64,000 nt of DNA from Bugula neritina. Taxonomy: Eukaryota > Animalia > Bryozoa. The stretch spans positions 2,429,680 to 2,493,679 of the forward strand of contig OZ037767.1 in assembly GCA_964035545.1 (NCBI GenBank), read 5' to 3'. The position numbers and the translations under genes are program-made. Each line of letters begins with the position of its first letter. Within the stretch, counting starts at the first letter, position 1. This document shows positions 4,201 through 32,891 of this stretch, one piece after another. A model generated the notes under the pieces. That model saw nothing but the letters and a program-made list of their open reading frames with translations, did not search any database and was not told the origin of the DNA.

Positions 4201-7200
4201 ATAATATAATGTATAATGATATTATTTTATGCTATACTATAGTGTGTTATATTATAATATGACTGGTCACACATATTCACTGAAACAAACCTTTTTAAGT
4301 TCTCTCCTAGTTGAATTACTTGCAGCAACTCTCTGAAGAGTGAAATTGACCTAAAATATAAAATCATTTTAAATTTCACATATTCTATCAAAAATGTTAA
4401 GTATAACATTAGTTTTACACTACATATAGGTCTATACACCAGTCTTATTTTCAATGGTGTGCAATAAAATGCTTTATCACTTTATCACATGCAGTATAAT
4501 AGAATTCTATATAGAATGGTAATACTAAAAGTTTAATGTTTACAGAAGCAGTAAAGAATATACAGAATGATACAGGAGTATCTTCTACTAACCTGACTCA
4601 AAGGAATTTTCTTATTTTTTTCATAAACATATTTGAGAACGGTTTTGGCCTTTCGAATTTTATTTACCTGCAATAAAAGTTCAAACAATGTTATAATATT
4701 TATTCTGTCACAACTTTGTATATCATGTCTACTTTCTCAACTAGACAAATCGCACAAAGCAGTTTGCATTTTTATAGGTTACCGACTCCCCATAGTGGAA
4801 TTGTTAAAATTTTATATATAAAGTTCTAGTATATATATTACCTCATCAAATTGTAAGGCAATACATGGAATTAGTCAAATATGTCCAGTATAATATGATT
4901 AGGAATATATGTTATAAAATAAAAGTAAAACTAGAAAATTATAACAACCGTCAGAGCAAGCTAACCTTCACCTCATTAGTTTGCAATGAGTCATCAATGA
5001 TTTAACTGTTATATTGTAATATTACTCTGTCTTTAGACTTTTTCAACAAACATATCATCTGTACTGCGTAACTCAATATAGTGGGAATAAAGTAACCAGC
5101 TACAAAAATGCACATGATGTTTTGGGGAGCAACAGTGGGTTTAAATTCTGGCAGATGCCATTGGTGATATCAGGAAAGGTATTTGGACAGCAAAGCTCTC
5201 AAACCAAATAAGAAGTACAAGAAGGGCAGGGGGTGGTGACCCTCATTACTATGTGTTCCCTCAGAGATAAATACTTCAGGATTTAGGCAAAAGTACGGTC
5301 TATTTAAAGCACTTCTTAAACAATAAGTAGATGACATTGAACCTGGACAAGATAGCGTGGGCTCTCTGGTAGAGTCAGTAACAAGGGTACGGAGGCTATA
5401 GCAGGTACAGCCGTAACTAGAAGAAATAACCTCCAGCTATTGAATGTATATCCTTGTATGTACCAAGTCCATTCTTCATGTGGTATGATCAGCCAGGCTA
5501 AACCTGTGGGTAACAATCATACTACATTAAAATAGACATCAGTTAAAGCGGTTCATTCACTGCTAACGCTAGCCACATTCAAGTGGCTTTGTATGGTGCT
5601 ATAATCTCTATAAAATCAGTATTATGAAGAAAATACTGGTATAGGCTCAATCAGGAGAACACAACTCTGAGAAATATTAGCACAAACAATAAGCAATTTA
5701 TATGAATACACCCTACATATAAAAGGCGCAAACACATGTCGAAAAGCATTTCAAGTATATCAAGCAATTTTTTGCAATTTGGATTTTATGTGCCTGACTA
5801 AGTTAGTAACTCGCATCTACGTCCTTTGCAAACCAAAAGTAAAGAAACAGATAATACTGATCAGATTTCTGTTAGACAATATATGCCACTTTTCAAACCG
5901 AATGCTATTAATAATTTATTTAATGAAACAAGAATATGAAAAGAAGAAAACCTGTTGTGTTGTAGTAACGCAGTAAATAAGTTGATAAACTTCATGTATT
6001 TTTCCTGCAGGCTGCTGGAGTTACATTCCCGTAGTGTGTTTGAAACATATTTTAGCAAAATATTTTGTTGCACCACTTTGGCAAAAGTTCTTGAAACTCA
6101 AATATTTGTGTGTATGCTTATGTAATAAAAAAGACAAAGTTTTTCAGAAAAAAAATTTTTCAGACTATATAAATCAACGTCGTCTGCAACTTGAGATATA
6201 TTTAACAAGTAATTAGGCAGTTTAAACCAGTCGTCTAGTTCATAACTAAGTTTCAGAGAGACTTGAAAACATCATTTTGCTGACTCCAATAAATTATAGG
6301 GAAAACCAAAAAGGAGACATTTTTAAAATGCTGTCAGACAGCTAAAGCTCAACAGCAGCAGTTGTTTTCTATACAGTTGCCTCAGCAGAAAATTTTCCAA
6401 TATGCCAGTTGAAGCTATGCAGTTAGAAAAATGCAAGACCGGCAGGAGTTTGAACTATAGACTACTGCATGTGATGCTATGATAAATAAGTCCATTAGAT
6501 CAGGTTAAAGGTATATGGTATGACTAAAAATCTATAATTAGCTACTAATACACACAATAGCTACTAACTACCAGTTGCTACAAACAAACACCAGCTATAG
6601 AGTACTAAAACAAATACCAGGCTTGAAGCAGATGTGAAATTATGATTTTCAATAATGTTAATATTTGTAGCATAAGAAGTTGTCCCTCTTTCCGATGAAG
6701 CAATAAAAATTAAAGCAAATCATCAGTTAGCGGATTAAGCTGGACAAACTATTTAGAATAAAAGTTTTGAGGCTATATATTCCCCTTTTTATCAATATAG
6801 AAATATAATGGAACTCAGTCAACTGTTTATGGAGCACCCAGATAAGCCTCCACTGATAACAATACTTGGAAATCAGAGCAAAGATCCAAGCTCCGAAAAC
6901 TAAATAAGAGGCCTTAAAAACAAACATCAATCTGTCAAGATGCGATAACAGTGGTCTATTTTTATCTATTTTACCAATGTTTTAGCCATAGTTGTAACAT
7001 AACTCATAATAAATCACAGCATTTTTGTGAATTGTTAACATAATTTTAAGTTGAGATGTCATTTTGAATCATTATGAGTAAATAACGATTCTTGCTACCC
7101 TTATACATTCTACTAAAACACAAAAACTAGTATTTGGTGCTGCAACTGCCAATAAGAAAAGTATATTCTCAACAATGGCACCATATTATAGAACTAATAT

Positions 7201-10200
7201 TGCCACACAGCTTGTGTGAGCTATTGTTACATAGAAGCCTTTTGTTTATTAGTTTATTAGTTAGTAGTTTGCATATTATGTTTAGGTGATGGGAATGTTA
7301 AAGAACAATTTTTCACAAGCTGTGTGCCTATGTGTATTGAGCATAGATGCTTAAGTTACAGCTTCTAGGTTATTTCATCATTGTTTTTAGCCATACTTGA
7401 CTTAATGAGTAAGTCAATAATTATATTATTGTATTATATTATACTACCAACAAGAAACTATAAATACAACTACAAAAATCTATATTATTGCTATAAAATT
7501 AAGTACTATAAAAAATATTTATAATATGATATCATCATCATAAAGTTAAATATAACAACGATAATTTACTAGATTTTTGGTAGAGAAAATCTCACCTGCA
7601 ATGAGTAGTAATCCCACGGAGAAGCTGCCAGGTAAAGTCAGCATGTATCTACCTCTGTTTTTGATTGGCAGAAACTCAATAACGTAAGTACTGGTCACAC
7701 ATACACTTCCACCCAGACTAAAATAATATAGAATAAGACTTACCATACTTTTACATTATCATCTTTGGATAGAAGTTGCACGTATACATATTCAAAAAAA
7801 TATATTTAACCTTTTCTGAATTTCGTTTCAATACTAAAATTTTATTACAATATAGATTAATTTTATCAATTTTATTATCTTTATTGTATTTTGTAATTTA
7901 AGCTAGACTAGATTTTCAAGTTTTATATATTGTTAATAATAGTAATATGCTGATAAATATTCGGAATAAGTAATCAAGTTTTAGTAAATAACAAGAGTTT
8001 GAAAAACTCTCACTGATTTTTGTGAATCTCACGACATAGTTCAAGGTAAATCCAATAGCATTATGTTTCAAATCTAATAAACCGAATGCCATAGAGAGGT
8101 AAGAATTTGTAGAAATAAAACTGGAAAATAGGGAATTTAACTTACCCGACCCCCCAAAAGAATCTCATTACTGTAAGAAACCACAGGCTTTGACTAGTTG
8201 AAGCTCCAATAGCAAACAGAGTGTTGATAATTTCACAAAGTACCAGCACTGGAATCCTGCCTTTAATATCAGCAATAGACCCCCAAACAAATGATCCAAC
8301 TAAAATACCTGTCAAATATAGGTTACTCAGGCTTTGATTTATTAATATATGGCAATTAATGCTGCACTTGTAAAATAAAACATTAAAATACACTGTTATT
8401 TATATATCAAGTTCAGGGATAGGTGTATAGGAATGGAGAAATTAAAAAATCTTGTGTTTTAGATTATAAATATAGCAAAGAAGTCTCAAACCAAAGTTTT
8501 TAAAAAAAATTAAAGAACTTGGGCTAATAAAAGTTCTCCACTACTGCTCTGCTATTAAAAGACTCAAACAGTTAACTATATATGTACCTAAGCCGATGTT
8601 TAATTTAACAGAATATTAAGTTAGAACCAAAATATAATATAGTCATCTCCTCACAAGTTAAAACAAGGAGCTGCTTCTATCTGTTAACAGCTACAAGAAA
8701 CTCAACATACTCAGTTGAAATAAAGTGATGTCTACTGCCTACCAACGAGTCCAGTTGATGGAAATAGACTAAGTTCTAAGTCACTGGCCTCAAATTCACA
8801 AGAAACTTTTGGCATAATGAAGGAAGGGGCAAGATTACCGAGAGCATCAGCCAACCGGCACCACCCAAACACCATCAACATCCATATTTGGAACCTACCA
8901 AAGCCTGATAATTGAAAAGGCAGGAATGAGTGTCAACATGAGTTAAATGCAATTTGTAAAGCATTCACGTTTCTAAAATATATTGTATGTTAAGCTAAAA
9001 ATGGTAACGTGAGTTATGGAAGTAATGAAAGCAGTTTTTGAAAATCAGCTAGAACGTGATTTAAAATGTTTCATAGAACTTTATGATTTATCAACTCACA
9101 ATTTTTATATAAAAAAGAATAAAAAATTATTCAATAGAAATCCTAAACAAGTACCAAGTAACATTATTACTGCTGAGTTACCCATGTGGAACCAACCATT
9201 GCAGGATATTCAAATCAAAAAACAACAATAAAGTATGACCATCTCTTAGGGAGTAGAACCTACCTATCATTTCTACAGCTTGGTCTAAGGTCAAAGGTTC
9301 TCCATCTTTCTTATCATTATTGTTGGTACTCTGGTAGTCAGTCACATCTGAAACATAATATTATGATTATCTACATAAACTAGTGTAAGACCTCTCTCTA
9401 GAAGATAAGTACAGATCATCTAAATGGCTTCCGGGTACAACATTTTTACTTCCATTTTAAACAATTTATAAGAGCTAAAAAATTCATTCAATGTGAACAT
9501 TTTTAATTTCTAACTGATAATTTGTCCCGTTGAGCTAAAACTTTTTAGCAATTAGCAAAATAAATAGAAGTCGGGACAAAAAATGTTGTCATTTAAACTT
9601 TGTAAGTTGAAAGTATTAAGTTCTGATAGAACATTTTGAAAAAAAAAATTGAATTACACAAGCAGAATAAATAAAACTATATTATGTTTGCTTTATTTCT
9701 TATATTAGATTAAGTCTCTCAGTTTGGAATGTGAGTTTAATGTTCTAGAAATCTCCAAATGATGTGTTGGGATGGCACACAGCTAAAGTTGCCTTTGACT
9801 CTAGAAAACTAGCTCAGCTAGTAGTAATTATCATGTAAATATAAATCAATGGAGTAATATTGAACATAGCAGTTGAAAGCTATTTTCAAAATATAATCAC
9901 GAATTTGATCATCAATATTTATAACATACATGCAATGCGCACAGGAAAAACAGGGGTGGAAGTACTAGTACTCCAGGGGTATACCAGTACTCTAAGGGGA
10001 ATACTTTACAGAAATTTAAAGAAAACTTTGTCTATATTTGATTTGTTACCCAATTTATAAATATGTATTAGTGTATATTTTATCACTTCACTATACCATA
10101 GCTGTTAGACTACAAAGTATAGACATTATAGAGGGGGTACAATTAGGAATGCTGGTGAAATGGGTACCACTCTTACAATTTAGGAGAATACTTATAATAA

Positions 10201-15650: not shown

Positions 15651-16768
15651 AGAATTGAATTCTTGAAAATAGGAGATGAGAGGATAGCTCAGTATTTTTA
15701 TTGCACTACAAGAGTTGTTTTCTCTTATTGAACAGACTGTCACTAAGCCTTATAATGCATAATATGATAGTAGTTCTACAAACCCAGGTTTCCGTATTGA
15801 GAACATACAGAACGTGTTAGCAGTTTTATGACCTCTTCCACAGTATTTGTAGTCACCATATCAGCTACTACAGTTATTATACACCTATACTGTGTATGTA
15901 TATGGTTAACAGAAGTGAAGCCACTGTATATTATAATAATGTACTATTAGTTAATCTTGCTCATGGCCTGGCAAGTGGAAGCAATGACTTAAAACTATGT
16001 AAATTTATATATTGCAATGGGTGAATGTACTTGCAGTAATGGAGAATTTAGGAGAAGCATGAGGTTTAAATAAAAAGTGCAGTAAGTTGTGCTCTTGTGA
16101 GACTTTTAGCCTGCAGCAAAATTTATAGAGGAAACTCAAGAACTAGGACTATCAATTTTTTTACCATTGCACTTATAGGGGCTTATTCCCATTTTCAGCA
16201 CCAACTTGGATAATGAACTGCTTTTGTTTATTATTGCGGTAATATTGATAAAATATTGAGACAAATATCAAAAAGACATTGATCACAAGAAACCAGGTTT
16301 ATTTTAGATACTATACTTAAAGCAGCATTTTTCTTCAAAACCATTATCAGTCCAAAATGTAGATAAGATAAAATACAACACCATTATACCTATAAAGTTT
16401 CACACCATTACCAACACCAATACTAAATAGTGTAATAAAAACCTAAACCAATTTAATTATTGTAAACAAATTAATTAGTAAATATAATACTTAGGACTAT
16501 ATAATAATATATTGTAGTATATAATAATGTATTGTAACATATGTATAATAATGTATTATAATATATTATAATGTATAATATATTGTGATGCACTATATCG
16601 CAATGCATGTACTGAAATACAAACCCTGCCAGTACTCACTATAATGAAGAGATTCTTACTCAATTAACTCATACAAAAATAAAAGTACAGTTGAATATAA
16701 AAATATGACCATACGAGGTATATTGAGGTGATACACAATTTTCTGATGTGACAATAACTAGCCACAAA

Positions 16769-17018
16769 TAGCTGCCAGAATGAATAATGCTGCCGTTGAT
16801 GAACGTGCCCAATAGGTACAATAGCTGCCAAAAAGGGCTTGTCCTGCTGCTGCAAGGCTTATAAGGGAAATAGCTGCCAGAAAGAGCTTACAACAACCGA
16901 GTAGAGCTGCCAATGAAGGGGCGGATAGCTGCCAATGAAGGGGAGGATAGCTGCCAGAAGGGCTCCCAAAAAGGGGCAAATATTGTTGTTAAACATAAGA
17001 ACTGCCAATATGGGCTGT
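16769..17018 (-). promoter_or_regulatory. Cluster of miR-22/miR-745/miR-980-family target sites in the TAT 3' UTR
   Basis: Six perfect GGCAGCT heptamers on the mRNA strand (plus-strand sites starting 16769, 16822, 16871, 16904, 16926, 16948). Five have the A1 anchor (GGCAGCTA), and most have a downstream block resembling the miRNA 3' part (TGAAGGG, AAGGGCT, AAGAGCT). Degenerate copies occur at 16788, 16845, 16962 and 17000. The array lies 175-420 nt after the TAT stop. Confidence 0.7.
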
Positions 17019-17191
17019 AGATTAAAACAATGAGATTGACTACTTTAATACATAATTAGGTGATGAGAAATTTAGAATGTCATTTTTTGACTTGAAAAAA
17101 CTTATCTAATAATAATTATAACAGAAAAAAAAATTTCAGTAAATATTAAAATTGGCACAGTTAGATGTGTTGGTAGTATTAGCAATATCTG

Positions 17192-20100
17192 CTATGGCAA
17201 TCTTTGGTTATTGGCAATTCTGGAGTTACCCTCCCCTGTCGGCACATTGTTGAGCAGGTAAACACTGGAAGTGATGCGGCTCAAGATAGCAACTTTCCCA
17301 GTTTTCTTGAAGCTGGTGGTGAGACGGCCGTCACACTGGTAGTGCCGTTGACAGAACAGTGCTATTCTCTCGCAGGCTTCAATGGCTTTGTCTTTCGGCA
17401 CGCAGAGAACAATCCGGAAAAAGCCCGGCATGGAGAAACACTGCAGCAGACAGAAAACCCACCAACTATCAATCAAGTAAATTCAATAAATTTAATTTAG
17501 CTCAAATTTTACATCTACGAAACTCATGTGGGTTACAGTTGCCAACCCTGTGAGAACACCTAATGGAAAGGGTTTTATAACTAAGCTAGGGACTTTTTTA
17601 CGATTCTGGCAAAGGAACAATTATAATTAAATGCCCTTCCAAACATTACTGGGAATCAAACCATCGACCTTGTGTTTACTAAGCCATTAAGCTAAATGCT
17701 TTTTAAATCTTACTTCTATACTTGAATTCATTTCAAATGTCAATGCAAAGCTTACTAATTATTTAGATCTGATTCAGTTATCAACTCACCGAGGCAGGCA
17801 AACAGAACACCGACTCTTCTGACATGAGTGACTCGGTAAACTCGATGTCAGACTTGAAGGTCGGGAAGTTGTCAAGGTCTATTTTCACCATCATGTACAG
17901 AGCACCGGCTGGTTCAATGGGTTTCAAACCTTTGGTGCCCGAGATGAGCTCATAGAACATTCTGGAATTGCTCTACAGAATGATGAAATAATTGAATACA
18001 TCAAACATAAGTTCTACACTGGTAATCTGCAGCAAATCCTAGAAACTATTTCTCACTAGAAACAAGACGCCATGTTCATGTAATCATCAGTTAACCGAAA
18101 GTCAGCAAAAGATAAAAGTCAGCAGAAACTGAGAACAAAATTGAAAATTGATCTTCATGAGTCAGTCACTGATCATTTGAGCAAAATTAAAGTTGTCCCA
18201 AAAACAGTAGTTTTCCTAGACATTCAAACAAATTTTAAACATGTTTTCCAACTAAAACTCATCAATGCTAGACAGGCAAACATTGGCTTGTGTTGTAATA
18301 TTAAACCAAGAAGTGAAAAAGATACCTGAACAAGTTGCGTGGTGAAGTCAAATGAAGACTGTGGCGTAGACTTGAGTATATCTGGCAGAGCTCCCTGTAT
18401 AATAGAGCACGGCCCAAGAGTTCTCTGGGTCAAGGATGTTAAGCACCGCCTCATATCACCGGTGATAGCCCCAGCTCTGTCGTGTACAATCACCCACCCC
18501 AACCTCCAGCCCGGAACTAGAAACCTCTTGGAGATTGAACTGACAGTGAATACAGGCACAGTCTCGGAGACAGATGCGAATGGATAATGCTCTTTGTCAT
18601 TGTACACCTAAAACCAGAACAACTATAAAAATATGCTGCAACTCTCAAAATAAAACTTACACAACAAGTTAGTTAATGCCATTAGAGCCCTACTACAATC
18701 CCAATGGAAAACACTTTACAATACTGAAGCTGGTATTCACTGCGTTTCCATGACTGCGCGAATGAATGCTTCGTACGGATTATTTGTGGTTTGTGGTTTG
18801 CATTAACTTATAGTTGCGGTTTCATTCGATGTAACTGTTCCCATTAGCCGAATGAAAAAATCCATTCGCATAATGCGATAATGGAAACGCAGTGATTAGC
18901 TCATCTAAACTATTACATAATATTGATTATGATGTAACAGGTTCAGCAACCACCAACAAATATTATTATAATCCTACGGAAAATTTCCATCCAATAGTTC
19001 ATCAACATAAGGAGCTAGTAACGATAAGTACTATTGATTGTTTAGTAAACTGACCACATGTTCATAAACCTCATCAGCAATAATGGGAACTCTGTACATG
19101 TCGCAGACGTCAATGATCTCTTGCACATGCTCTCTAGAGAAAACTCCGCCACACGGGTTAGATGGGCTGTTGGTGATAATGGCTGCTGTCCCTTCATCTA
19201 TCTGAGATATCATGTGGCCAATGTCCACCTTCCAGCCATTTTCTGGCTAAAAGTTTCAGTTGAACAAAAAACTTTACACTTTTTCAAATGACTTCAACAT
19301 CTAGATTCTAGAACTTTCTACTTTAGTAGATTTATAATAATCAAATCTGTGATATTAAAACTGCCAGAGAAAGTTAAGCTATAAACAAGTACACTGGAGA
19401 AATATATATAATATAATGAAAATATTATGCCTAATACATTACAATTAAAAATCATATTATAATAAAATTACCATGTACAGTTTAATATAATTAAAAAACC
19501 ATATATAATAAAATTACAATGCATGGTATAAAATAATTAAATTACCATACAAATTACTGAACTCTGTATTGTATAACTCCCTTTTTATTGAAATTTTTAA
19601 AGTAGACATGCATTTTATTGTACTTCAGCTTAAAGTTGCATTGAAATAGATAAATGAACAAAAATTAATTGCAACTCAGTTTATACAAATTTTTTGTAAA
19701 ATGTTGGAACACAATTTCTCAACTAGAAGCAGTAGAGGAGAAATTCAAATAGCCTAAGTTATTTAGTTTTATTATTAAATTTTGGTTTGGGACCATAGAG
19801 GGAGATGCTATACCTGGAGGTCATAGAACTTGGTCTCAATGCCCATACTATGGGCCAGGGTCTGGTACAGAGGGAAGCCAGGTCTTGGCACAAGAATGTT
19901 TTGTCCTGGATTTGCAAGCAGATTTATCACAAGCTCTAAGGCTTGGGAGCAACCACTGGTCAATACAACGTCCTGCAATAAATTCCAACAATAATATCCT
20001 GTGCAATGCTACTAAGGGCATTCAATGGTTTAATCCCCTATGAACTGGACAAATAGGGGCCACAATGCTGGTCATTTGACCTTGGAATTCTTTGGTGTAT

Positions 20101-22398
20101 TGTTATCAACTTCTATTCAAAAGTATTCAACAAAGCCTAGTATACATCTACATAGAATTAAATCTGTTTTGAGCTTGGCAACCGTTAGAATAACAATTCC
20201 TCACCTGCACTGAGGCAGGGGCACCCATGCTGGTTGAATAGTCAGCCACAGCTTGTCTGGCTTCCATTGACCCTAAAGAACAATGTGCTTCTATTATGTA
20301 AGTCTTGTATTCATGTAACAGCTCTATACAATTAGTCATTGGAGAAAAGTACAAGAAATATTAATCCAAATATAGCAGTGTTTACAATGGCACTATGCCA
20401 ATTTTTCTTGAGAAAAACAAGTTCAATATATAGTAAATATCTAGAATGTATCATTTCTGGGTGATTAATTGGTTGCTCTAATTTCTAGCTTAGGAAAAAA
20501 GTAACAAAAAAGCAAAATATGATATAAAAAATATGATATATAGCCAACTGCTATGCAAGTTAATTGTTTAAAAATACTTTTCTGTATTCTGTAAGCTTTC
20601 ATGCTGAGCTGAATTTTATTTCACAATTATAGTCTAGTTGAAAGAGCCTACCCAGGGAACTAGGGTAGCCATTGTGGTTGCCACTCCTGACTGCCCTTAC
20701 CACAGCATCCACACATTCTTCAGCTACATTGAGGTTGCCAAACACTGTGGGATCACCTGCAAGAGCAGCCATCAATCAACACGTATAAATAAACATCTGC
20801 GTATCCATGGATACGATACATACCAAAGCATGAAGAGAGTAGCAAGGTTTCGCTACATAACTACCTATCACATCCAATCCTTTCTCACGAGCCACCAATT
20901 GCCACCATTTACAATCTGCTATGTCTAAAGAAGCAGAGCCTATTCACTACTAGACTACTTGGTAAACTAATCAAATCACTTGGAAGCATGCATCTTGGGC
21001 AACAGGGTTTCGTTGCCGGCAAATACGGTAAAGCTGGAATTATGTTGAAGTAAGAGAAGTTAGTAGACAATAACCAGACTCAGTATTGCTTGGCAAGTTG
21101 CATTAAGTTAAAATAGAAGCGTGAGTGTTTGCACTTGCAGCTTACGTGATCACCAGTGTCGTTTGATACTTATTCTTGGGTGTACTTCTGTCCGCTTGAA
21201 AATGTTCAAAGTGTTGGTGCGGCTAAAATATAAAGTTTTCTAAGAACACACGCACACACTACATCAGTGAAATTAGTGTTCATAATAAAACATATACAAT
21301 ATACAAAATCATCTTAAAACAATGTTTTACGATATTGTCTAGTAAGAGAAGATTATATAAGATATCAGGAACTATTACAATAGGTACAGTAACATTTGTA
21401 AGAACTAAATAGAAGTAATTATTAGTGGTAGTATAGCAAGAAGTATAATGAAATAGTAGATTTCATAAATATTGTAATATTAAATTAACACACCTGAGCA
21501 AAAATAACCACACTTTAGAACTTTAGTTAAAATATTTATTAGTATAAGAGATGAATCAATGCAACTATCCAGAGTATATTTAACTGGTTATATTCAATGC
21601 CTTACACACTAGGTCCAAGTTGCTGGGTCCAAGTTCCCAGTATACTATAATAGCCACCTGAAATTTGTGAACTTCATAGCATTAAATAAAACATTCGTTT
21701 GATTGAAAATAAAGAAGAAACAGAATTTAGTTTTTATGTCTGAAATATAATTTTGTTTCCAAATACACATTATTTTCTATTAGTTTAGTGGTTTAAATAA
21801 CAACAATTTTTCAAGTTGTAATTTAAGTTTTTAAATTTTAGTTGAACATTGTTGAAAGATTGTAATAAAATTAGCAGCACAATAATTTATACAAACTAAT
21901 AAACATTTTTATTATTCAGAAATTTTTTTTAAAGAATAAATAGATTTCATTTGGACCTGTAAAATGTAAATTTACCTAAAAACATATGCTACAACTCACA
22001 ACTACAATGTTACTTCAACGATTAAGATGAATTCATTCTATTTAGTGAATAGTAAAAATATTCAAATAGGCAAGCATATGAAAGAAGACATTATGATCAA
22101 AATAGAATAATAAGAAATAGTAAATAACAATCACAATGATGTAAACAAACACAGAAAATAAGGAAATGTAGATATTGGACTGACATTGATTATCTGACTG
22201 ATGACTTAACTTACCAATTGTCAATTTGATGAGTTCTTTGGAGGGGTTAGGGGATATGGTCATGCCATCAACAATCTTTCTGATAGGGTTCAATACTCTT
22301 TGGGATAACTCACTGGGTTTCAGGTTCCAATTCATATCTCTCACAATCACACCCTCCTCACTGCCACTGCTGTTGTTGTTGTTATTGTTGCTATTCAT
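17192..22398 (-). CDS. TAT: Tyrosine aminotransferase (class I PLP-dependent), about 473 aa, 8 coding exons
   Basis: Exons 22215-22398, 20652-20756, 20205-20272, 19814-19972, 19055-19246, 18326-18607, 17790-17972, 17192-17440. They are phase-consistent and sum to 1422 nt. Motifs: [60 protein letters not shown]-lysine motif [34 protein letters not shown]. Confidence 0.96.
17528..17700 (-). mobile_element. tRNA-headed SINE-like element (TAT last intron)
   Basis: The reverse complement gives A-box-like TAGCTTAATGG, B-box-like GGTTTGATTCC, core GTAATGTTTGGAAGGGCATT and tail AAGTCCCTAGC..AAAACCCTTTCCATTAGG..CTCACAGGG, shared with the copies at 25075, 43383 and 50476. Confidence 0.6.
18737..18895. 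mobile_element. MITE (non-autonomous DNA transposon) in a TAT intron
   Basis: Perfect 15-bp terminal inverted repeats TCACTGCGTTTCCAT (18737-18751) and ATGGAAACGCAGTGA (18881-18895), with further internal inverted similarity (GCGAATG/CATTCGC). No ORF. A possible 3-bp ATT flanking duplication appears if the TIRs are taken as 14 bp. Confidence 0.7.
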
Positions 22399-26331: not shown

Positions 26332-29300
26332 CTACTCATCAATTTGAAGTTCAGTTTCAGAAAATAAACAATCACAAAGACTACTGAAGAACTGAGCAAT
26401 ATCTTCTCTTGAGTCTGACGTTGGGTATATTGGGAGACAAAATGGATTTAGAGCTTCTGCTACTAAAGGTGGAAACCTTGACGCTATGTCTTCGAGGTTA
26501 TCTTGATTGGGCGATAGAATTGGTCGAATATTACACATCTGATGAAAATGAATAGCCAACTGCAACTCATACATTGAATCATCATGACTTGAGTATTCAT
26601 TGTCTGGCATAAGAAGCAGGACTGTGTCTGACTCACACATATATTTTGTCACCATGTCATTTGTGCATTCCCCGGGAAGAATGTCCCACCGCGATCTCAA
26701 CTGCATATCCTCGGGAAAGTTTTCACTCTGTGCGAAACTCCATATGGCAAACGCTATTGCTGATTGGACCTCACAACTCGTACAAAAACTCAAATATAAT
26801 TTATTTATAGAATAAGCATTTACTTGGCCCTGTTTCCCTATACAACAGATCATTCTCCGTAAACCAAATCTAATTCGCCATTGAAATCGGCGAAAGATAA
26901 AAAACCCAACGACAACGAAAAATATAAAAACAGCGCCTAGGCCAACTGCTAAGCCAATGACTAAAAATAAATCTGGATCAGGTTCTTTATCACAAGAATG
27001 TTGTGATGTACATTGACTCAAGTTACTACCACTCTCTTGACATTTCATGTCAAACAAGACAAACTTTGATTCTAGCAGCCATTCAACATATTGCCTCTCG
27101 CTAGAATTGCAGGCGCAGAGACAAGAAATGGGATTGCTACGGAGATCAATTATGAATTCTGATACTCTATTAGAATGACTGGTCAGAACTGCTTGCATTT
27201 CTCGTGATAAATGGCTTATTTGATTTTTAAAAAGACTGAGGTTTTGAAGGTTGAAAGGTAATGTTATATTCAAATATTTAACTTGGTTGTGGGCAGCAGA
27301 AAGTGAGTTTAAGTTTGGAAACATTCTATTCAGATCCAACGTCAAATTATCAGAGTGAAAAGTTACACTGAGTCTCTTCAAATTAAAATGCTCCACATCG
27401 TGAAACAAAACATTCTCAGCTTCAATCAGATTCAGTTCAACTAGTTGAGGAAACCAATTTAACAGATGGCCTAAATTGAAGCATTTGCTGCTATCACCAA
27501 ATTTTAAATCCTTTGCATTAATACTTCTAACTTGATAGAAACCTGAAATGTTGGAACAATCGCAATCTCCGGGCATATTATTTCCTGAAATATCCAGGCT
27601 AGTTAACCTATTGGTTGGGTGAATTTGACACACGTTTTCAATATTGAGGGGATATTTAGTGGCGCGTGACGTGAGATTCTCTAACCTCGGAGGTAACCGG
27701 AAACCATGATGTTTCTCGCCTGGTTCAATACCAGTAGTGTCTGTGTCAGGAAACAGATGTTTATCGGCCGATAGAAACCACGGATGATAAAGTGAGGAGG
27801 AGTGAGAACATGACAATGATGTTATTCCACGATCAAAATAAGAAATATCCAATGATTCCAAATACTTCAAACCCAAACTTGTGTAATTCAAAATTGTCTG
27901 AATAAAATTGAGACTGAATTTATTCTTTGATAAATCCAGCGCTCGTAAATATGGGAAAGTTAAGTTGTTGAAGGTAGGCATTTTATTTGTAGCCTCCCAA
28001 ACTAGAGTGTTACCAGATAGTGAAAGAGCAGTGAGATTATATACTGTGGGCGGCTTTGTGTTATCACACTGAAAGGTTCGATAATTGTTGGAGAATGAAG
28101 AATCTTGATCCATGATGGCCACTCTCAAAGTATCAGGAAATATACATCTCAAATTCACGAAATCTAAAAAATAAAAGTATGAAATAAAAATTTACAGAAA
28201 AATGGTACAGTCAATTCTATCATTTTAATTATATAAATGAGTCAAGTATGCACCAAGTAGATGCACAAGTATCTTACCAACTGCTAACAAACAAATCTAT
28301 GCAACTTGGGAGAAAAGAGATAAAATGAATAAGATTGTATTTGACTTTACAGATAATTTTATCACTTTTCCTTCCATATTTAGAGAAATACAAACATACA
28401 ATATGTTATAAATGTCTGGTGAGTTGAACTTATTTAATTTAGACAAATAAACTTTCATGTAAGTGTGAGTCATACTACATGTGTGAGTTATACTATATGT
28501 GTGAGTCATACCATATGTGAGTGAGTCATACTATATGTGAGAGTCATACCCTATGTGTGAGTCATACTATGTGTGAGTGAGGCATACTATATGTGTGAGT
28601 CATACTATGTGTGTGAGTTATACTATATGAGTGAGGCATACTATATGCGTGAGTCATACTATATGTGCGAGTCATACTATGTGTGTGTCATACTATATGT
28701 GTGTGAGTCATACGATGTGTGAATTATACCATATGTGAGTCATACTATATGTGTGTGAGTCATACCATATGTGTGAGTCATACTATATGTGTGAGTCATA
28801 CTATATGTGTGAGTCATACTATATATATGCTAGCCATACAATTTGCATGAGTCATACTTAAGTTGAAAGTGCAGGAGATATCCAAGTAGACAACAGAGTG
28901 GAGTAATTGTGAAAGGCCTGGCAGTAAGTAGTTCCCATTATCTAGTCCGCCACACTGCCTGAAGGACACCCTGGTGAGGTTAAGGGAAGACAGTGCTGCC
29001 AGATTACTACTCTCAGAGAGCTTACAGGAAGTGCCGCCTAGCAACACAATAACAAAACTTATATTAAAACTTGATATACAATATAGATATTACTAGTTTT
29101 TAAGCTTTGTCTTCCCTAAGTAGGATGAGGGCTCTTACAGCTGTAATAGATATTATAAGGAAAGGAGGCAAATCCCGACATGTTGCAACTGTGTTCAATA
29201 TATCAATGCATAATTAACATTTTAATACAAAACAGTATGTACTGATAGGCTAATACTAGAATTTTTAAACTCATGCATTCAACTATAGCCTCACTTCAAA

Positions 29301-32805: not shown

Positions 32806-32891
32806 GGCTCCGTGGCGCAATGGATAGCGCGTCGGACTTCTAATGGTTAGATGTTATTCGGAGGTTGTGGGTTCGAGTCCCACCGGAGTCG
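32806..32891 (+). tRNA. trnR-UCU: tRNA-Arg (anticodon TCT) with a 13-nt intron
   Basis: Acceptor stem GGCTCCG/CGGAGTC plus G discriminator, D arm GCGC-AATGGATA-GCGC, and anticodon stem TCGGA/TTCGG with TCT at 32839-32841. Intron ATGGTTAGATGTT (32843-32855) sits at the canonical 37/38 position. T arm is GTGGG-TTCGAGT-CCCAC. Confidence 0.95.

What the first reader, a model, noticed from the sequence alone, without database searches (positions are those of the whole stretch)
16769..17018. TAT 3' UTR carries a dense array of bulged miR-22/745/980-family sites: candidate natural miRNA sponge or TDMD trigger
Seen in sequence: within about 250 nt downstream of the TAT stop, the plus strand reads TAGCTGCCAGAATGAA (16769), TAGCTGCCAAAAAGGGCTTGTCC (16822), TAGCTGCCAGAAAGAGCTTA (16871), GAGCTGCCAATGAAGGGG (16904), TAGCTGCCAATGAAGGGG (16926) and TAGCTGCCAGAAGGGCT (16948). 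Degenerate copies are TGCTGCCGTTGATGAA (16788) and GAACTGCCAATATGGGCTGT (about 16999). Established knowledge (mature sequences recalled from memory, to be verified): the MIR-22 family has seed AGCUGCC. Members include human miR-22 AAGCUGCCAGUUGAAGAACUGU, Drosophila miR-980 UAGCUGCCUUGUGAAGGGCUUA, and spiralian miR-745a AGCUGCCUGAUGAAGAGCUGUC and miR-745b GAGCUGCCAAAUGAAGGGCUGU. Because the plus strand mimics the mature miRNA, the minus-strand TAT mRNA is complementary to it. That gives five 8mer sites and one 7mer-m8 site, with pairing to the 3' part of the miRNA (GAAGGGCU/AAGAGCU) across a variable central bulge. Seed and 3' block are kept while centres and spacers vary, which is not how a plain minisatellite decays. 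Units are too closely spaced (22 nt) to be pre-miRNA hairpins. Inference: this is extreme cooperative repression of tyrosine catabolism by miR-22/745, or the metabolic mRNA doubles as a sponge or ZSWIM8-type target-directed degradation trigger for this miRNA. I am not aware of this being described for TAT.
Basis: partly seen in the sequence, partly recalled or inferred. Interest (0 to 1): 0.9.

Follow-up and report, generated by a model that had tools for sequence, protein, structure and literature searches.

The report
Bryozoan enzyme mRNA traps ancient microRNA
The messenger RNA for a tyrosine-breakdown enzyme in the moss animal Bugula neritina carries eight packed docking sites for one ancient microRNA, and related species keep at least one such site in a form that, in flies and mammals, makes an mRNA destroy its microRNA.

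Summary
Confirmed and extended. The window is Bugula neritina. The single-copy TAT gene has 8 MIR-22/miR-745b sites 174-423 nt after its stop: five 8mers, one 7mer-m8 and two seed-mismatched. All are on the mRNA strand and inside the spliced mRNA (RNA contigs of a sister lineage). The genome holds one matching MIR-22-family hairpin (C4, both arms align to Rfam mir-22, below the cut-off). Six sites pair 6-8 nt to the miRNA 3' half, far above shuffled controls. Two seed-plus-3' sites in tandem occur nowhere else in the genome. New here: all five other TAT lineages of the same clade whose 3' UTR could be read keep a site with 6-11 bp of 3' pairing. Three have only a weak seed, which is the layout of a TDMD trigger. 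Of 74 other TAT loci, only Owenia has such a site, 2.6 kb out. Best reading: an old clade-wide trigger-like site, expanded in Bugula into an array that both represses TAT and probably degrades miR-745b (about 0.5). Pure strong repression is about 0.33. Expression of the miRNA and its decay were not tested. My three look-ups in the scan's notes found no earlier report.

The parts
17192..17440 (-). TAT last coding exon, stop TAG at 17194-17192
   Evidence: splice joint 17440/17790 in RNA contigs
17790..17972 (-). TAT penultimate coding exon
   Evidence: joints; tree
18326..18605 (-). TAT coding exon
   Evidence: (match to solved TATs); single copy in genome
19053..19248 (-). TAT coding exon; further exons lie upstream to a probable ATG near 22398 (inferred, not mapped)
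16550..17191 (-). TAT 3' UTR; 3' end somewhere between about 16550 and 16790, not mapped exactly
   Evidence: contig depth like the last exon to 16790 (X5, X14) and into the 16547-16667 bin (X9); none below 16547
16999..17017 (-). site 1: seed with a G:U wobble at nt 2, pairs nt 16-21 (6 WC)
16948..16964 (-). site 2: 8mer, pairs nt 13-20 (8 WC, offset -3, 3' dG -14.8); the strongest site
16926..16942 (-). site 3: 8mer, pairs nt 12-18; one unit of the 22-nt duplication absent from L023/L024
16904..16920 (-). site 4: 7mer-m8, pairs nt 12-18
16871..16888 (-). site 5: 8mer, pairs nt 13-20 (6 WC + 2 G:U)
16822..16839 (-). site 6: 8mer, pairs nt 13-20 (7 WC + 1 G:U)
16787..16806 (-). site 7: seed mismatch at nt 2, interrupted 3' pairing (weak)
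16769..16784 (-). site 8: 8mer with short 3' pairing
17044..17049 (-). ATTAAA upstream of the array: possible proximal poly(A) signal that would give a site-free isoform (use not shown)
   Evidence: kept in L023/L024
17152..17158 (-). single 7mer-m8 match to the miR-96/263 seed family
   Evidence: seed as in the miRNA tables of PMC3972184 and PMC12261956

Best explanation
TAT mRNA in this clade (bryozoans, by tree and by the Bugula label) carries a conserved binding element for miR-745b, the MIR-22 family member. [quoted passage not shown] This is the layout through which trigger RNAs make ZSWIM8 destroy Argonaute and its miRNA. In Bugula the element has expanded to 7-8 sites with strong seeds and shorter 3' pairing, the last step being a 22-nt duplication. 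Most likely the mRNA is both a strongly repressed target and a trigger that lowers miR-745b where TAT is transcribed, which makes a double-negative switch between tyrosine catabolism and MIR-22 activity. Shown: sites, their place in the mRNA, a candidate miRNA gene, 3' pairing above chance, conservation. Inferred: Argonaute binding, repression, decay.
For: In spliced mRNA: an oligo-dT contig spans three spliced introns and runs to 16790. Hairpin at G000:C4:14348180-14348260(-): -32 kcal/mol, z -2.5; both arms align to Rfam mir-22; the mature arm differs from published miR-745b at about four positions; CNNC 16 nt downstream. 3' pairing score 51.5 against 31.1 +/- 3.7 for shuffled miRNA 3' halves, 0 of 3000. 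In four related species 53.0 against 36.4, p 0.001. A score of 7 or more occurs in 3.5% of 173 background seeds and in 5 of 8 window sites. Five of six seeds have A opposite nt 1 although the miRNA starts with G, the Argonaute t1A signature (established knowledge). Seeds 0 of 70 changed against 20 of 327 elsewhere between two lineages, p 0.03. In L076, L077 and L079 the seed and a 7-nt 3' block are invariant and aligned while the centre varies. L076 has 11 bp, L077 10 bp and L084 9 bp of 3' pairing with an m8 mismatch. The clade has support 100/98. 3' pairing energies of -9.9 to -14.8 for 7 of 8 sites overlap the -9.6 to -17.1 range of validated triggers (PMC10899785; methods may differ). A ZSWIM4-8 gene is in the genome. 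The array is less folded than shuffles, z +1.7.
Against: No small-RNA data: expression and ends of the miRNA are inferred, and the hairpin scores 21.8 bits against a cut-off of 48. Bugula sites pair through nt 9-10 and have negative offsets with 2-3 unpaired miRNA bases, whereas validated triggers usually have a 3-11 nt loop that breaks nt 9-10. The 3' blocks are no better conserved than the rest of the UTR between the two Bugula lineages (8 of 82), and site 2 falls from 8 to 6 bp in L024. Only about 45% of top predicted fly triggers validated. From memory, not checked because the paper was not held: de la Mata 2015 found that multiple sites favour target decay over TDMD. Whether the ZSWIM gene is the ZSWIM8 orthologue was not tested.
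Confidence: 0.5

Rival explanations
1. Unusually strong conventional target. The sites only repress TAT. Eight closely spaced sites give cooperative silencing, and the 3' pairing raises affinity or makes up for weak seeds, with no decay of the miRNA.
For: Bugula seeds are 8mers and conserved while 3' blocks drift. Gain of copies is what selection for more repression would give. Relatives also hold plain seed-only sites. Pomacea TAT has two seed-only sites in 2.8 kb, p 0.003.
Against: Ordinary supplementary pairing is 3-5 bp. Relatives keep 9-11 bp reaching nt 19-21 while tolerating an m8 mismatch; a single change would give a better seed if repression were the only aim. TAT mRNA is well represented in these libraries (depth is a poor measure).
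Confidence: 0.33
2. Sponge. The mRNA holds miR-745b complexes and de-represses other targets without destroying the miRNA.
For: 7-8 high-affinity sites per transcript in an unstructured stretch.
Against: A polyadenylated mRNA with 8mer sites is itself repressed. From established knowledge, titration needs site numbers near the whole target pool. Relatives have only 1-3 sites.
Confidence: 0.07
3. Slicing target. Near-continuous pairing lets Argonaute cut TAT mRNA.
For: Site 1 of L025 would pair nt 2-15 without a break to the mollusc-type miR-745b. Bugula sites pair through nt 10.
Against: Every Bugula site leaves nt 11 unpaired or bulged against the candidate miRNA. Centres vary in relatives.
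Confidence: 0.04
4. Not a miRNA element: a decaying minisatellite, a DNA factor site (TGCCA-like half-sites) or a protein-binding motif that resembles the miRNA by chance.
For: The genome is full of minisatellites, and many hold AGCTGCC in tandem. One 22-nt duplication is present.
Against: The listed seed arrays elsewhere are mostly homogeneous repeats without the 3' block; two sites in tandem with the block occur only here. The match is specific to the miRNA 3' half, strictly on the sense strand, and kept in five distant orthologous UTRs.
Confidence: 0.06

Closest known systems
mRNA 3' UTR TDMD triggers: Nrep (miR-29), Lpar4 and Atp6v1g1 (miR-335-3p), Plagl1, Lrrc58 (PMC13041716)
   Same: Conserved seed plus extended 3' pairing in a coding mRNA; Lpar4 has two sites that work together
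   Different: 7-8 sites for one miRNA in 250 nt; negative offsets; a metabolic enzyme mRNA; a lophotrochozoan; not validated
Drosophila Kah trigger cluster and marge lncRNA (10.1101/2024.12.11.627053; PMC10899785)
   Same: Clustered trigger sites in one transcript
   Different: Kah sites serve different miRNA families; here one family is targeted many times
HSUR1 (miR-27) and m169
   Same: Weak seed with 3' pairing, like the L076, L077 and L084 sites (HSUR1 has a 6mer seed)
   Different: Viral RNAs; here a host metabolic gene
Multi-site repressed mRNAs such as lin-14 (lin-4) and HMGA2 (let-7), and the sponge CDR1as (from memory)
   Same: About 7 or more sites for one miRNA in one RNA
   Different: Here the sites are denser than I recall for those mRNAs and most carry 6-8 bp of 3' pairing; CDR1as is circular and resists deadenylation
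MIR-22 family: miR-22, miR-745b, miR-980 (Rfam RF00653, RF03278)
   Same: Seed AGCUGCC on the 3' arm; both arms align to mir-22
   Different: miR-22-like centre with a miR-745b-like 3' end; below the gathering score; no 745a partner found

Membership tests
canonical miRNA target (MIR-22 family) | 7-8mer seed match on the mRNA strand, above chance | tested here: met
   6 against 0.06 expected, none antisense
canonical miRNA target (MIR-22 family) | sites inside the mature mRNA 3' UTR | tested here: met
   spliced contig to 16790, depth to about 16600; reads carry the sister-lineage alleles
canonical miRNA target (MIR-22 family) | preferential conservation of the seed | tested here: met
   (p 0.03)
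canonical miRNA target (MIR-22 family) | cognate miRNA gene in the genome | tested here: met
   hairpin on C4; below Rfam cut-off, identified by two-arm homology
canonical miRNA target (MIR-22 family) | miRNA expressed with TAT; Argonaute binding and repression | not testable with these tools
   no small-RNA or CLIP data reached
TDMD trigger (ZSWIM8 pathway) | at least 6 contiguous bp to the miRNA 3' region, often from nt 12-13 | tested here: met
   six window sites with 6-8 bp; relatives 6-11 bp (criterion)
TDMD trigger (ZSWIM8 pathway) | central loop of 3-11 nt that breaks pairing at nt 9-10 | tested here: inconclusive
   Bugula sites pair nt 9-10 and bulge nt 11-12; L076, L077, L084 and Owenia sites do break nt 8-10
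TDMD trigger (ZSWIM8 pathway) | conserved 3' pairing | tested here: inconclusive
   met across the clade; not met site by site between two Bugula lineages
TDMD trigger (ZSWIM8 pathway) | ZSWIM8 ligase present | tested here: inconclusive
   one PF21055 ZSWIM4-8 locus on C2; orthology not tested
TDMD trigger (ZSWIM8 pathway) | miRNA rises on loss of the site or of ZSWIM8 | not testable with these tools
   needs experiment
natural miRNA sponge | site abundance near miRNA abundance and resistance to repression | not testable with these tools
   contig depth cannot rank genes
minisatellite or dispersed repeat | homogeneous tandem units or copies elsewhere | tested here: not met
   only one 22-nt duplication; single copy; tandem seed plus 3' block unique
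pre-miRNA cluster | hairpins with complementary arms | tested here: not met
   both strands fold worse than shuffles, z +1.7 and +1.8; no Rfam hit

The most novel reading that the evidence does not exclude
TAT mRNA is a phylum-wide, ZSWIM8-dependent trigger for the ancient MIR-22 family. It would be, as far as my searches and memory reach, the first trigger in a lophotrochozoan and the first for this family. Bugula shows a natural series from one trigger site to eight, and relatives may carry a second trigger-like element in the same UTR, so a catabolic enzyme transcript would set miRNA half-life.
Probability: 0.4. Interest if true: 0.78.

Novelty: new variant of a known kind. Interest (0 to 1): 0.62.

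Why it matters
The validated TDMD triggers in the papers I read are few and come from mammals, flies, nematodes and viruses. A trigger-like site kept across a whole clade, with natural variants from one weak-seed, long-3' site to an eight-site array, gives a ready series for an open question: when do more sites turn a trigger into a repressed target? The variants can be tested in fly or mammalian cells without bryozoan genetics. It also links MIR-22, known as a metabolic regulator in mammals, to tyrosine catabolism in an invertebrate. Searches of the paper library found no title or abstract that links TAT with miR-22, miR-745 or miR-980, and none on Bugula microRNAs; the library is incomplete.

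Tried and rejected
The mollusc miR-745b pattern with 1 mismatch found nothing in the genome; a gapped pattern did. The 17-against-0 count is not used as evidence, because the reversed control contains CpGs and is biased low. The best Rfam mir-22 candidate L018 reads as coding sequence and lacks the seed; rejected. No 745a-type hairpin within about 10 kb of the 745b hairpin or among pattern hits; the 15 loci were not folded. Three other seed clusters (L064-L066) were looked at; L064 is a degenerate repeat and none showed the 3' block repeated. Chiton, Daphnia and eel TAT have no seed site downstream of the stop. The Mya look-up failed. No hairpin was found for the 18-nt element of L076, L077, L079 among three folded candidates; the exact complement is absent. 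De la Mata 2015 was not held.

Full report
Observation. Six exact AGCTGCC lie in 16770-16955, of 11 in the window. The gene is tyrosine aminotransferase on the minus strand, and database members of the same protein cluster are labelled Bugula neritina. It is single copy apart from a weak broken hit on a small contig. The stop is at 17194-17192, so the array lies 174-423 nt downstream. On the mRNA strand there are five 8mers and one 7mer-m8, none antisense, against 0.06 expected, plus two seed-mismatched sites.

Is it in the mRNA? An oligo-dT contig (X14, 1608 nt) crosses three spliced introns and continues to 16790. In X5 and X9 the depth over the array is like that of the last exon (5600-7900 against 5800-6600; 570-770 against 700), while introns sit near 10-40, and nothing lies below 16547. 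These runs share alleles with a second lineage, L023/L024, about 92% identical, so the RNA evidence is for the 7-site allele. An ATTAAA at 17044-17049 could give a short isoform without sites, but no drop in depth is seen; contig depth is a crude measure.

The miRNA. A gapped pattern and the Rfam mir-22 model meet at one hairpin, G000:C4:14348180-14348260(-). It folds at -32 kcal/mol, z -2.5. Both arms align to mir-22, at 21.8 bits against a cut-off of 48, and a CNNC lies 16 nt downstream. The inferred mature arm, GAGCUGCCAGUUGAAGGGCUGC, is close to miR-745b as printed for a clam and a snail (PMC3972184, PMC12261956). No 745a-type hairpin was found. Expression was not tested.

Pairing. Six of eight sites pair 6-8 contiguous nt to the 3' half, mostly from nt 12-13, at offsets -1 to -3. 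The summed score is 51.5 against 31.1 +/- 3.7 for shuffled 3' halves (0 of 3000). A score of 7 or more is reached by 5 of 8 sites and by 3.5% of 173 background seeds. The copies are not independent, since some arose by duplication, so the cross-species test below matters more. Five of six seeds have A opposite nt 1 although the miRNA begins with G; from established knowledge this reflects the Argonaute t1A pocket and argues against a mere copy of the miRNA gene. Both strands fold worse than shuffles, so the sites are open and are not hairpins.

Repeat or not. Triple seed clusters are common in this minisatellite-rich genome, and the listed ones are mostly homogeneous repeats. The array is single copy, and seed plus 3' block followed by another seed occurs only here. 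One 22-nt unit is present in the window and absent from L023/L024. Between the two lineages seeds show 0 changes in 70 positions against 20 in 327 elsewhere (p 0.03), but the 3' and central positions change at 8 in 82.

Relatives. Searches by single exon gave TAT loci that group with Bugula at 100/98 support on one exon tree and 93/93 on a second. All five lineages with a readable UTR carry a site with long 3' pairing: L025 (two 8mers, 7 bp), L079 (three seed sites, one with 7 bp), L076 (6mer seed, 11 bp), L077/L078 (6mer seed, 10 bp) and the earliest branch L084 (7mer-A1, 9 bp). In L076, L077 and L079 the distal site is aligned, with seed and a 7-nt 3' block invariant and the centre variable. 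The score for four of these species is 53.0 against 36.4 +/- 4.4, p 0.001. Among 74 TAT loci outside the clade, many with short UTRs and some probably not bilaterian, only Owenia has such a site, 2635 nt after the stop and beyond an AATAAA. Pomacea has two seed-only sites; chiton, Daphnia and eel have none.

Mechanism. A review of validated triggers says ordinary supplementary pairing is 3-5 bp, that 12 of 13 triggers have at least 6 bp, with energies of -9.6 to -17.1 kcal/mol and a 3-11 nt loop at nt 9-10 (PMC10899785). The L076, L077 and L084 sites fit this closely, and their weak seeds are hard to explain if repression were the only role. The Bugula sites meet the length and energy marks (7 of 8 at -9.9 to -14.8) but not the loop, and their 3' blocks drift. 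Two sites on one mRNA can work together as triggers (Lpar4; PMC13041716). A ZSWIM4-8 gene is present. I therefore read it as an old trigger-like site that Bugula has multiplied into an array that also represses TAT strongly (0.5). Pure repression is 0.33, sponge 0.07, no miRNA role 0.06, slicing 0.04. That these are functional miR-745b sites is about 0.9. Binding, repression and decay are all inferred.

Novelty. It works like a known kind (multi-site targets, mRNA triggers) and is not filed as a TDMD trigger, because the defining test is experimental. New are the pairing of TAT with MIR-22, the clade-wide trigger-like site, and the natural one-to-eight series. No title or abstract on this was found, and three look-ups in the scan's notes returned nothing that bears on it.

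Noticed in passing
L076 UTR +192, L077 UTR +242, L079 UTR +150 (alignment A5): An 18-nt element, AATGTGCTAGATGCCAAA, is identical in three otherwise poorly aligned TAT UTRs. Its complement resembles deuterostome miR-96 (from memory) with one extra base. Bugula has only a miR-96-family 7mer at 17152-17158. No matching hairpin was found in Bugula. It could be a second trigger-like site for an unknown miRNA.
   Followed up: partly
L067 (Owenia), 2635 nt after the TAT stop: One 8mer with 9 bp of 3' pairing to miR-745b; if transcribed, the element may be older than bryozoans.
   Followed up: partly
G000:C4:14348180-14348260 (-), L019: Candidate MIR-22/miR-745b gene of B. neritina; no 745a partner found within about 10 kb.
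   Followed up: yes
window 26332-28158 (-): 608-aa uninterrupted ORF of a Toll-like receptor type (leucine-rich repeats, transmembrane, TIR) upstream of TAT; a cluster member is named TIR domain-containing protein.
   Followed up: partly
window 16336-16422: Four or five copies of an ACACCA(T/A)T-like motif just beyond the RNA-covered 3' end; unexplained.
   Followed up: no
window 18737-18900: Intronic repeat that attracts many RNA contigs from other loci, probably a dispersed element.
   Followed up: no
G000:C1:32533758 (L004) and G000:C9:427070 (L017): Single 8mer sites with a target-side bulge and 3' pairing to miR-745b; possible further strong targets, gene context not checked.
   Followed up: no
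window 32806-32891 (+): A tRNA gene, the only Rfam hit in the window.
   Followed up: no
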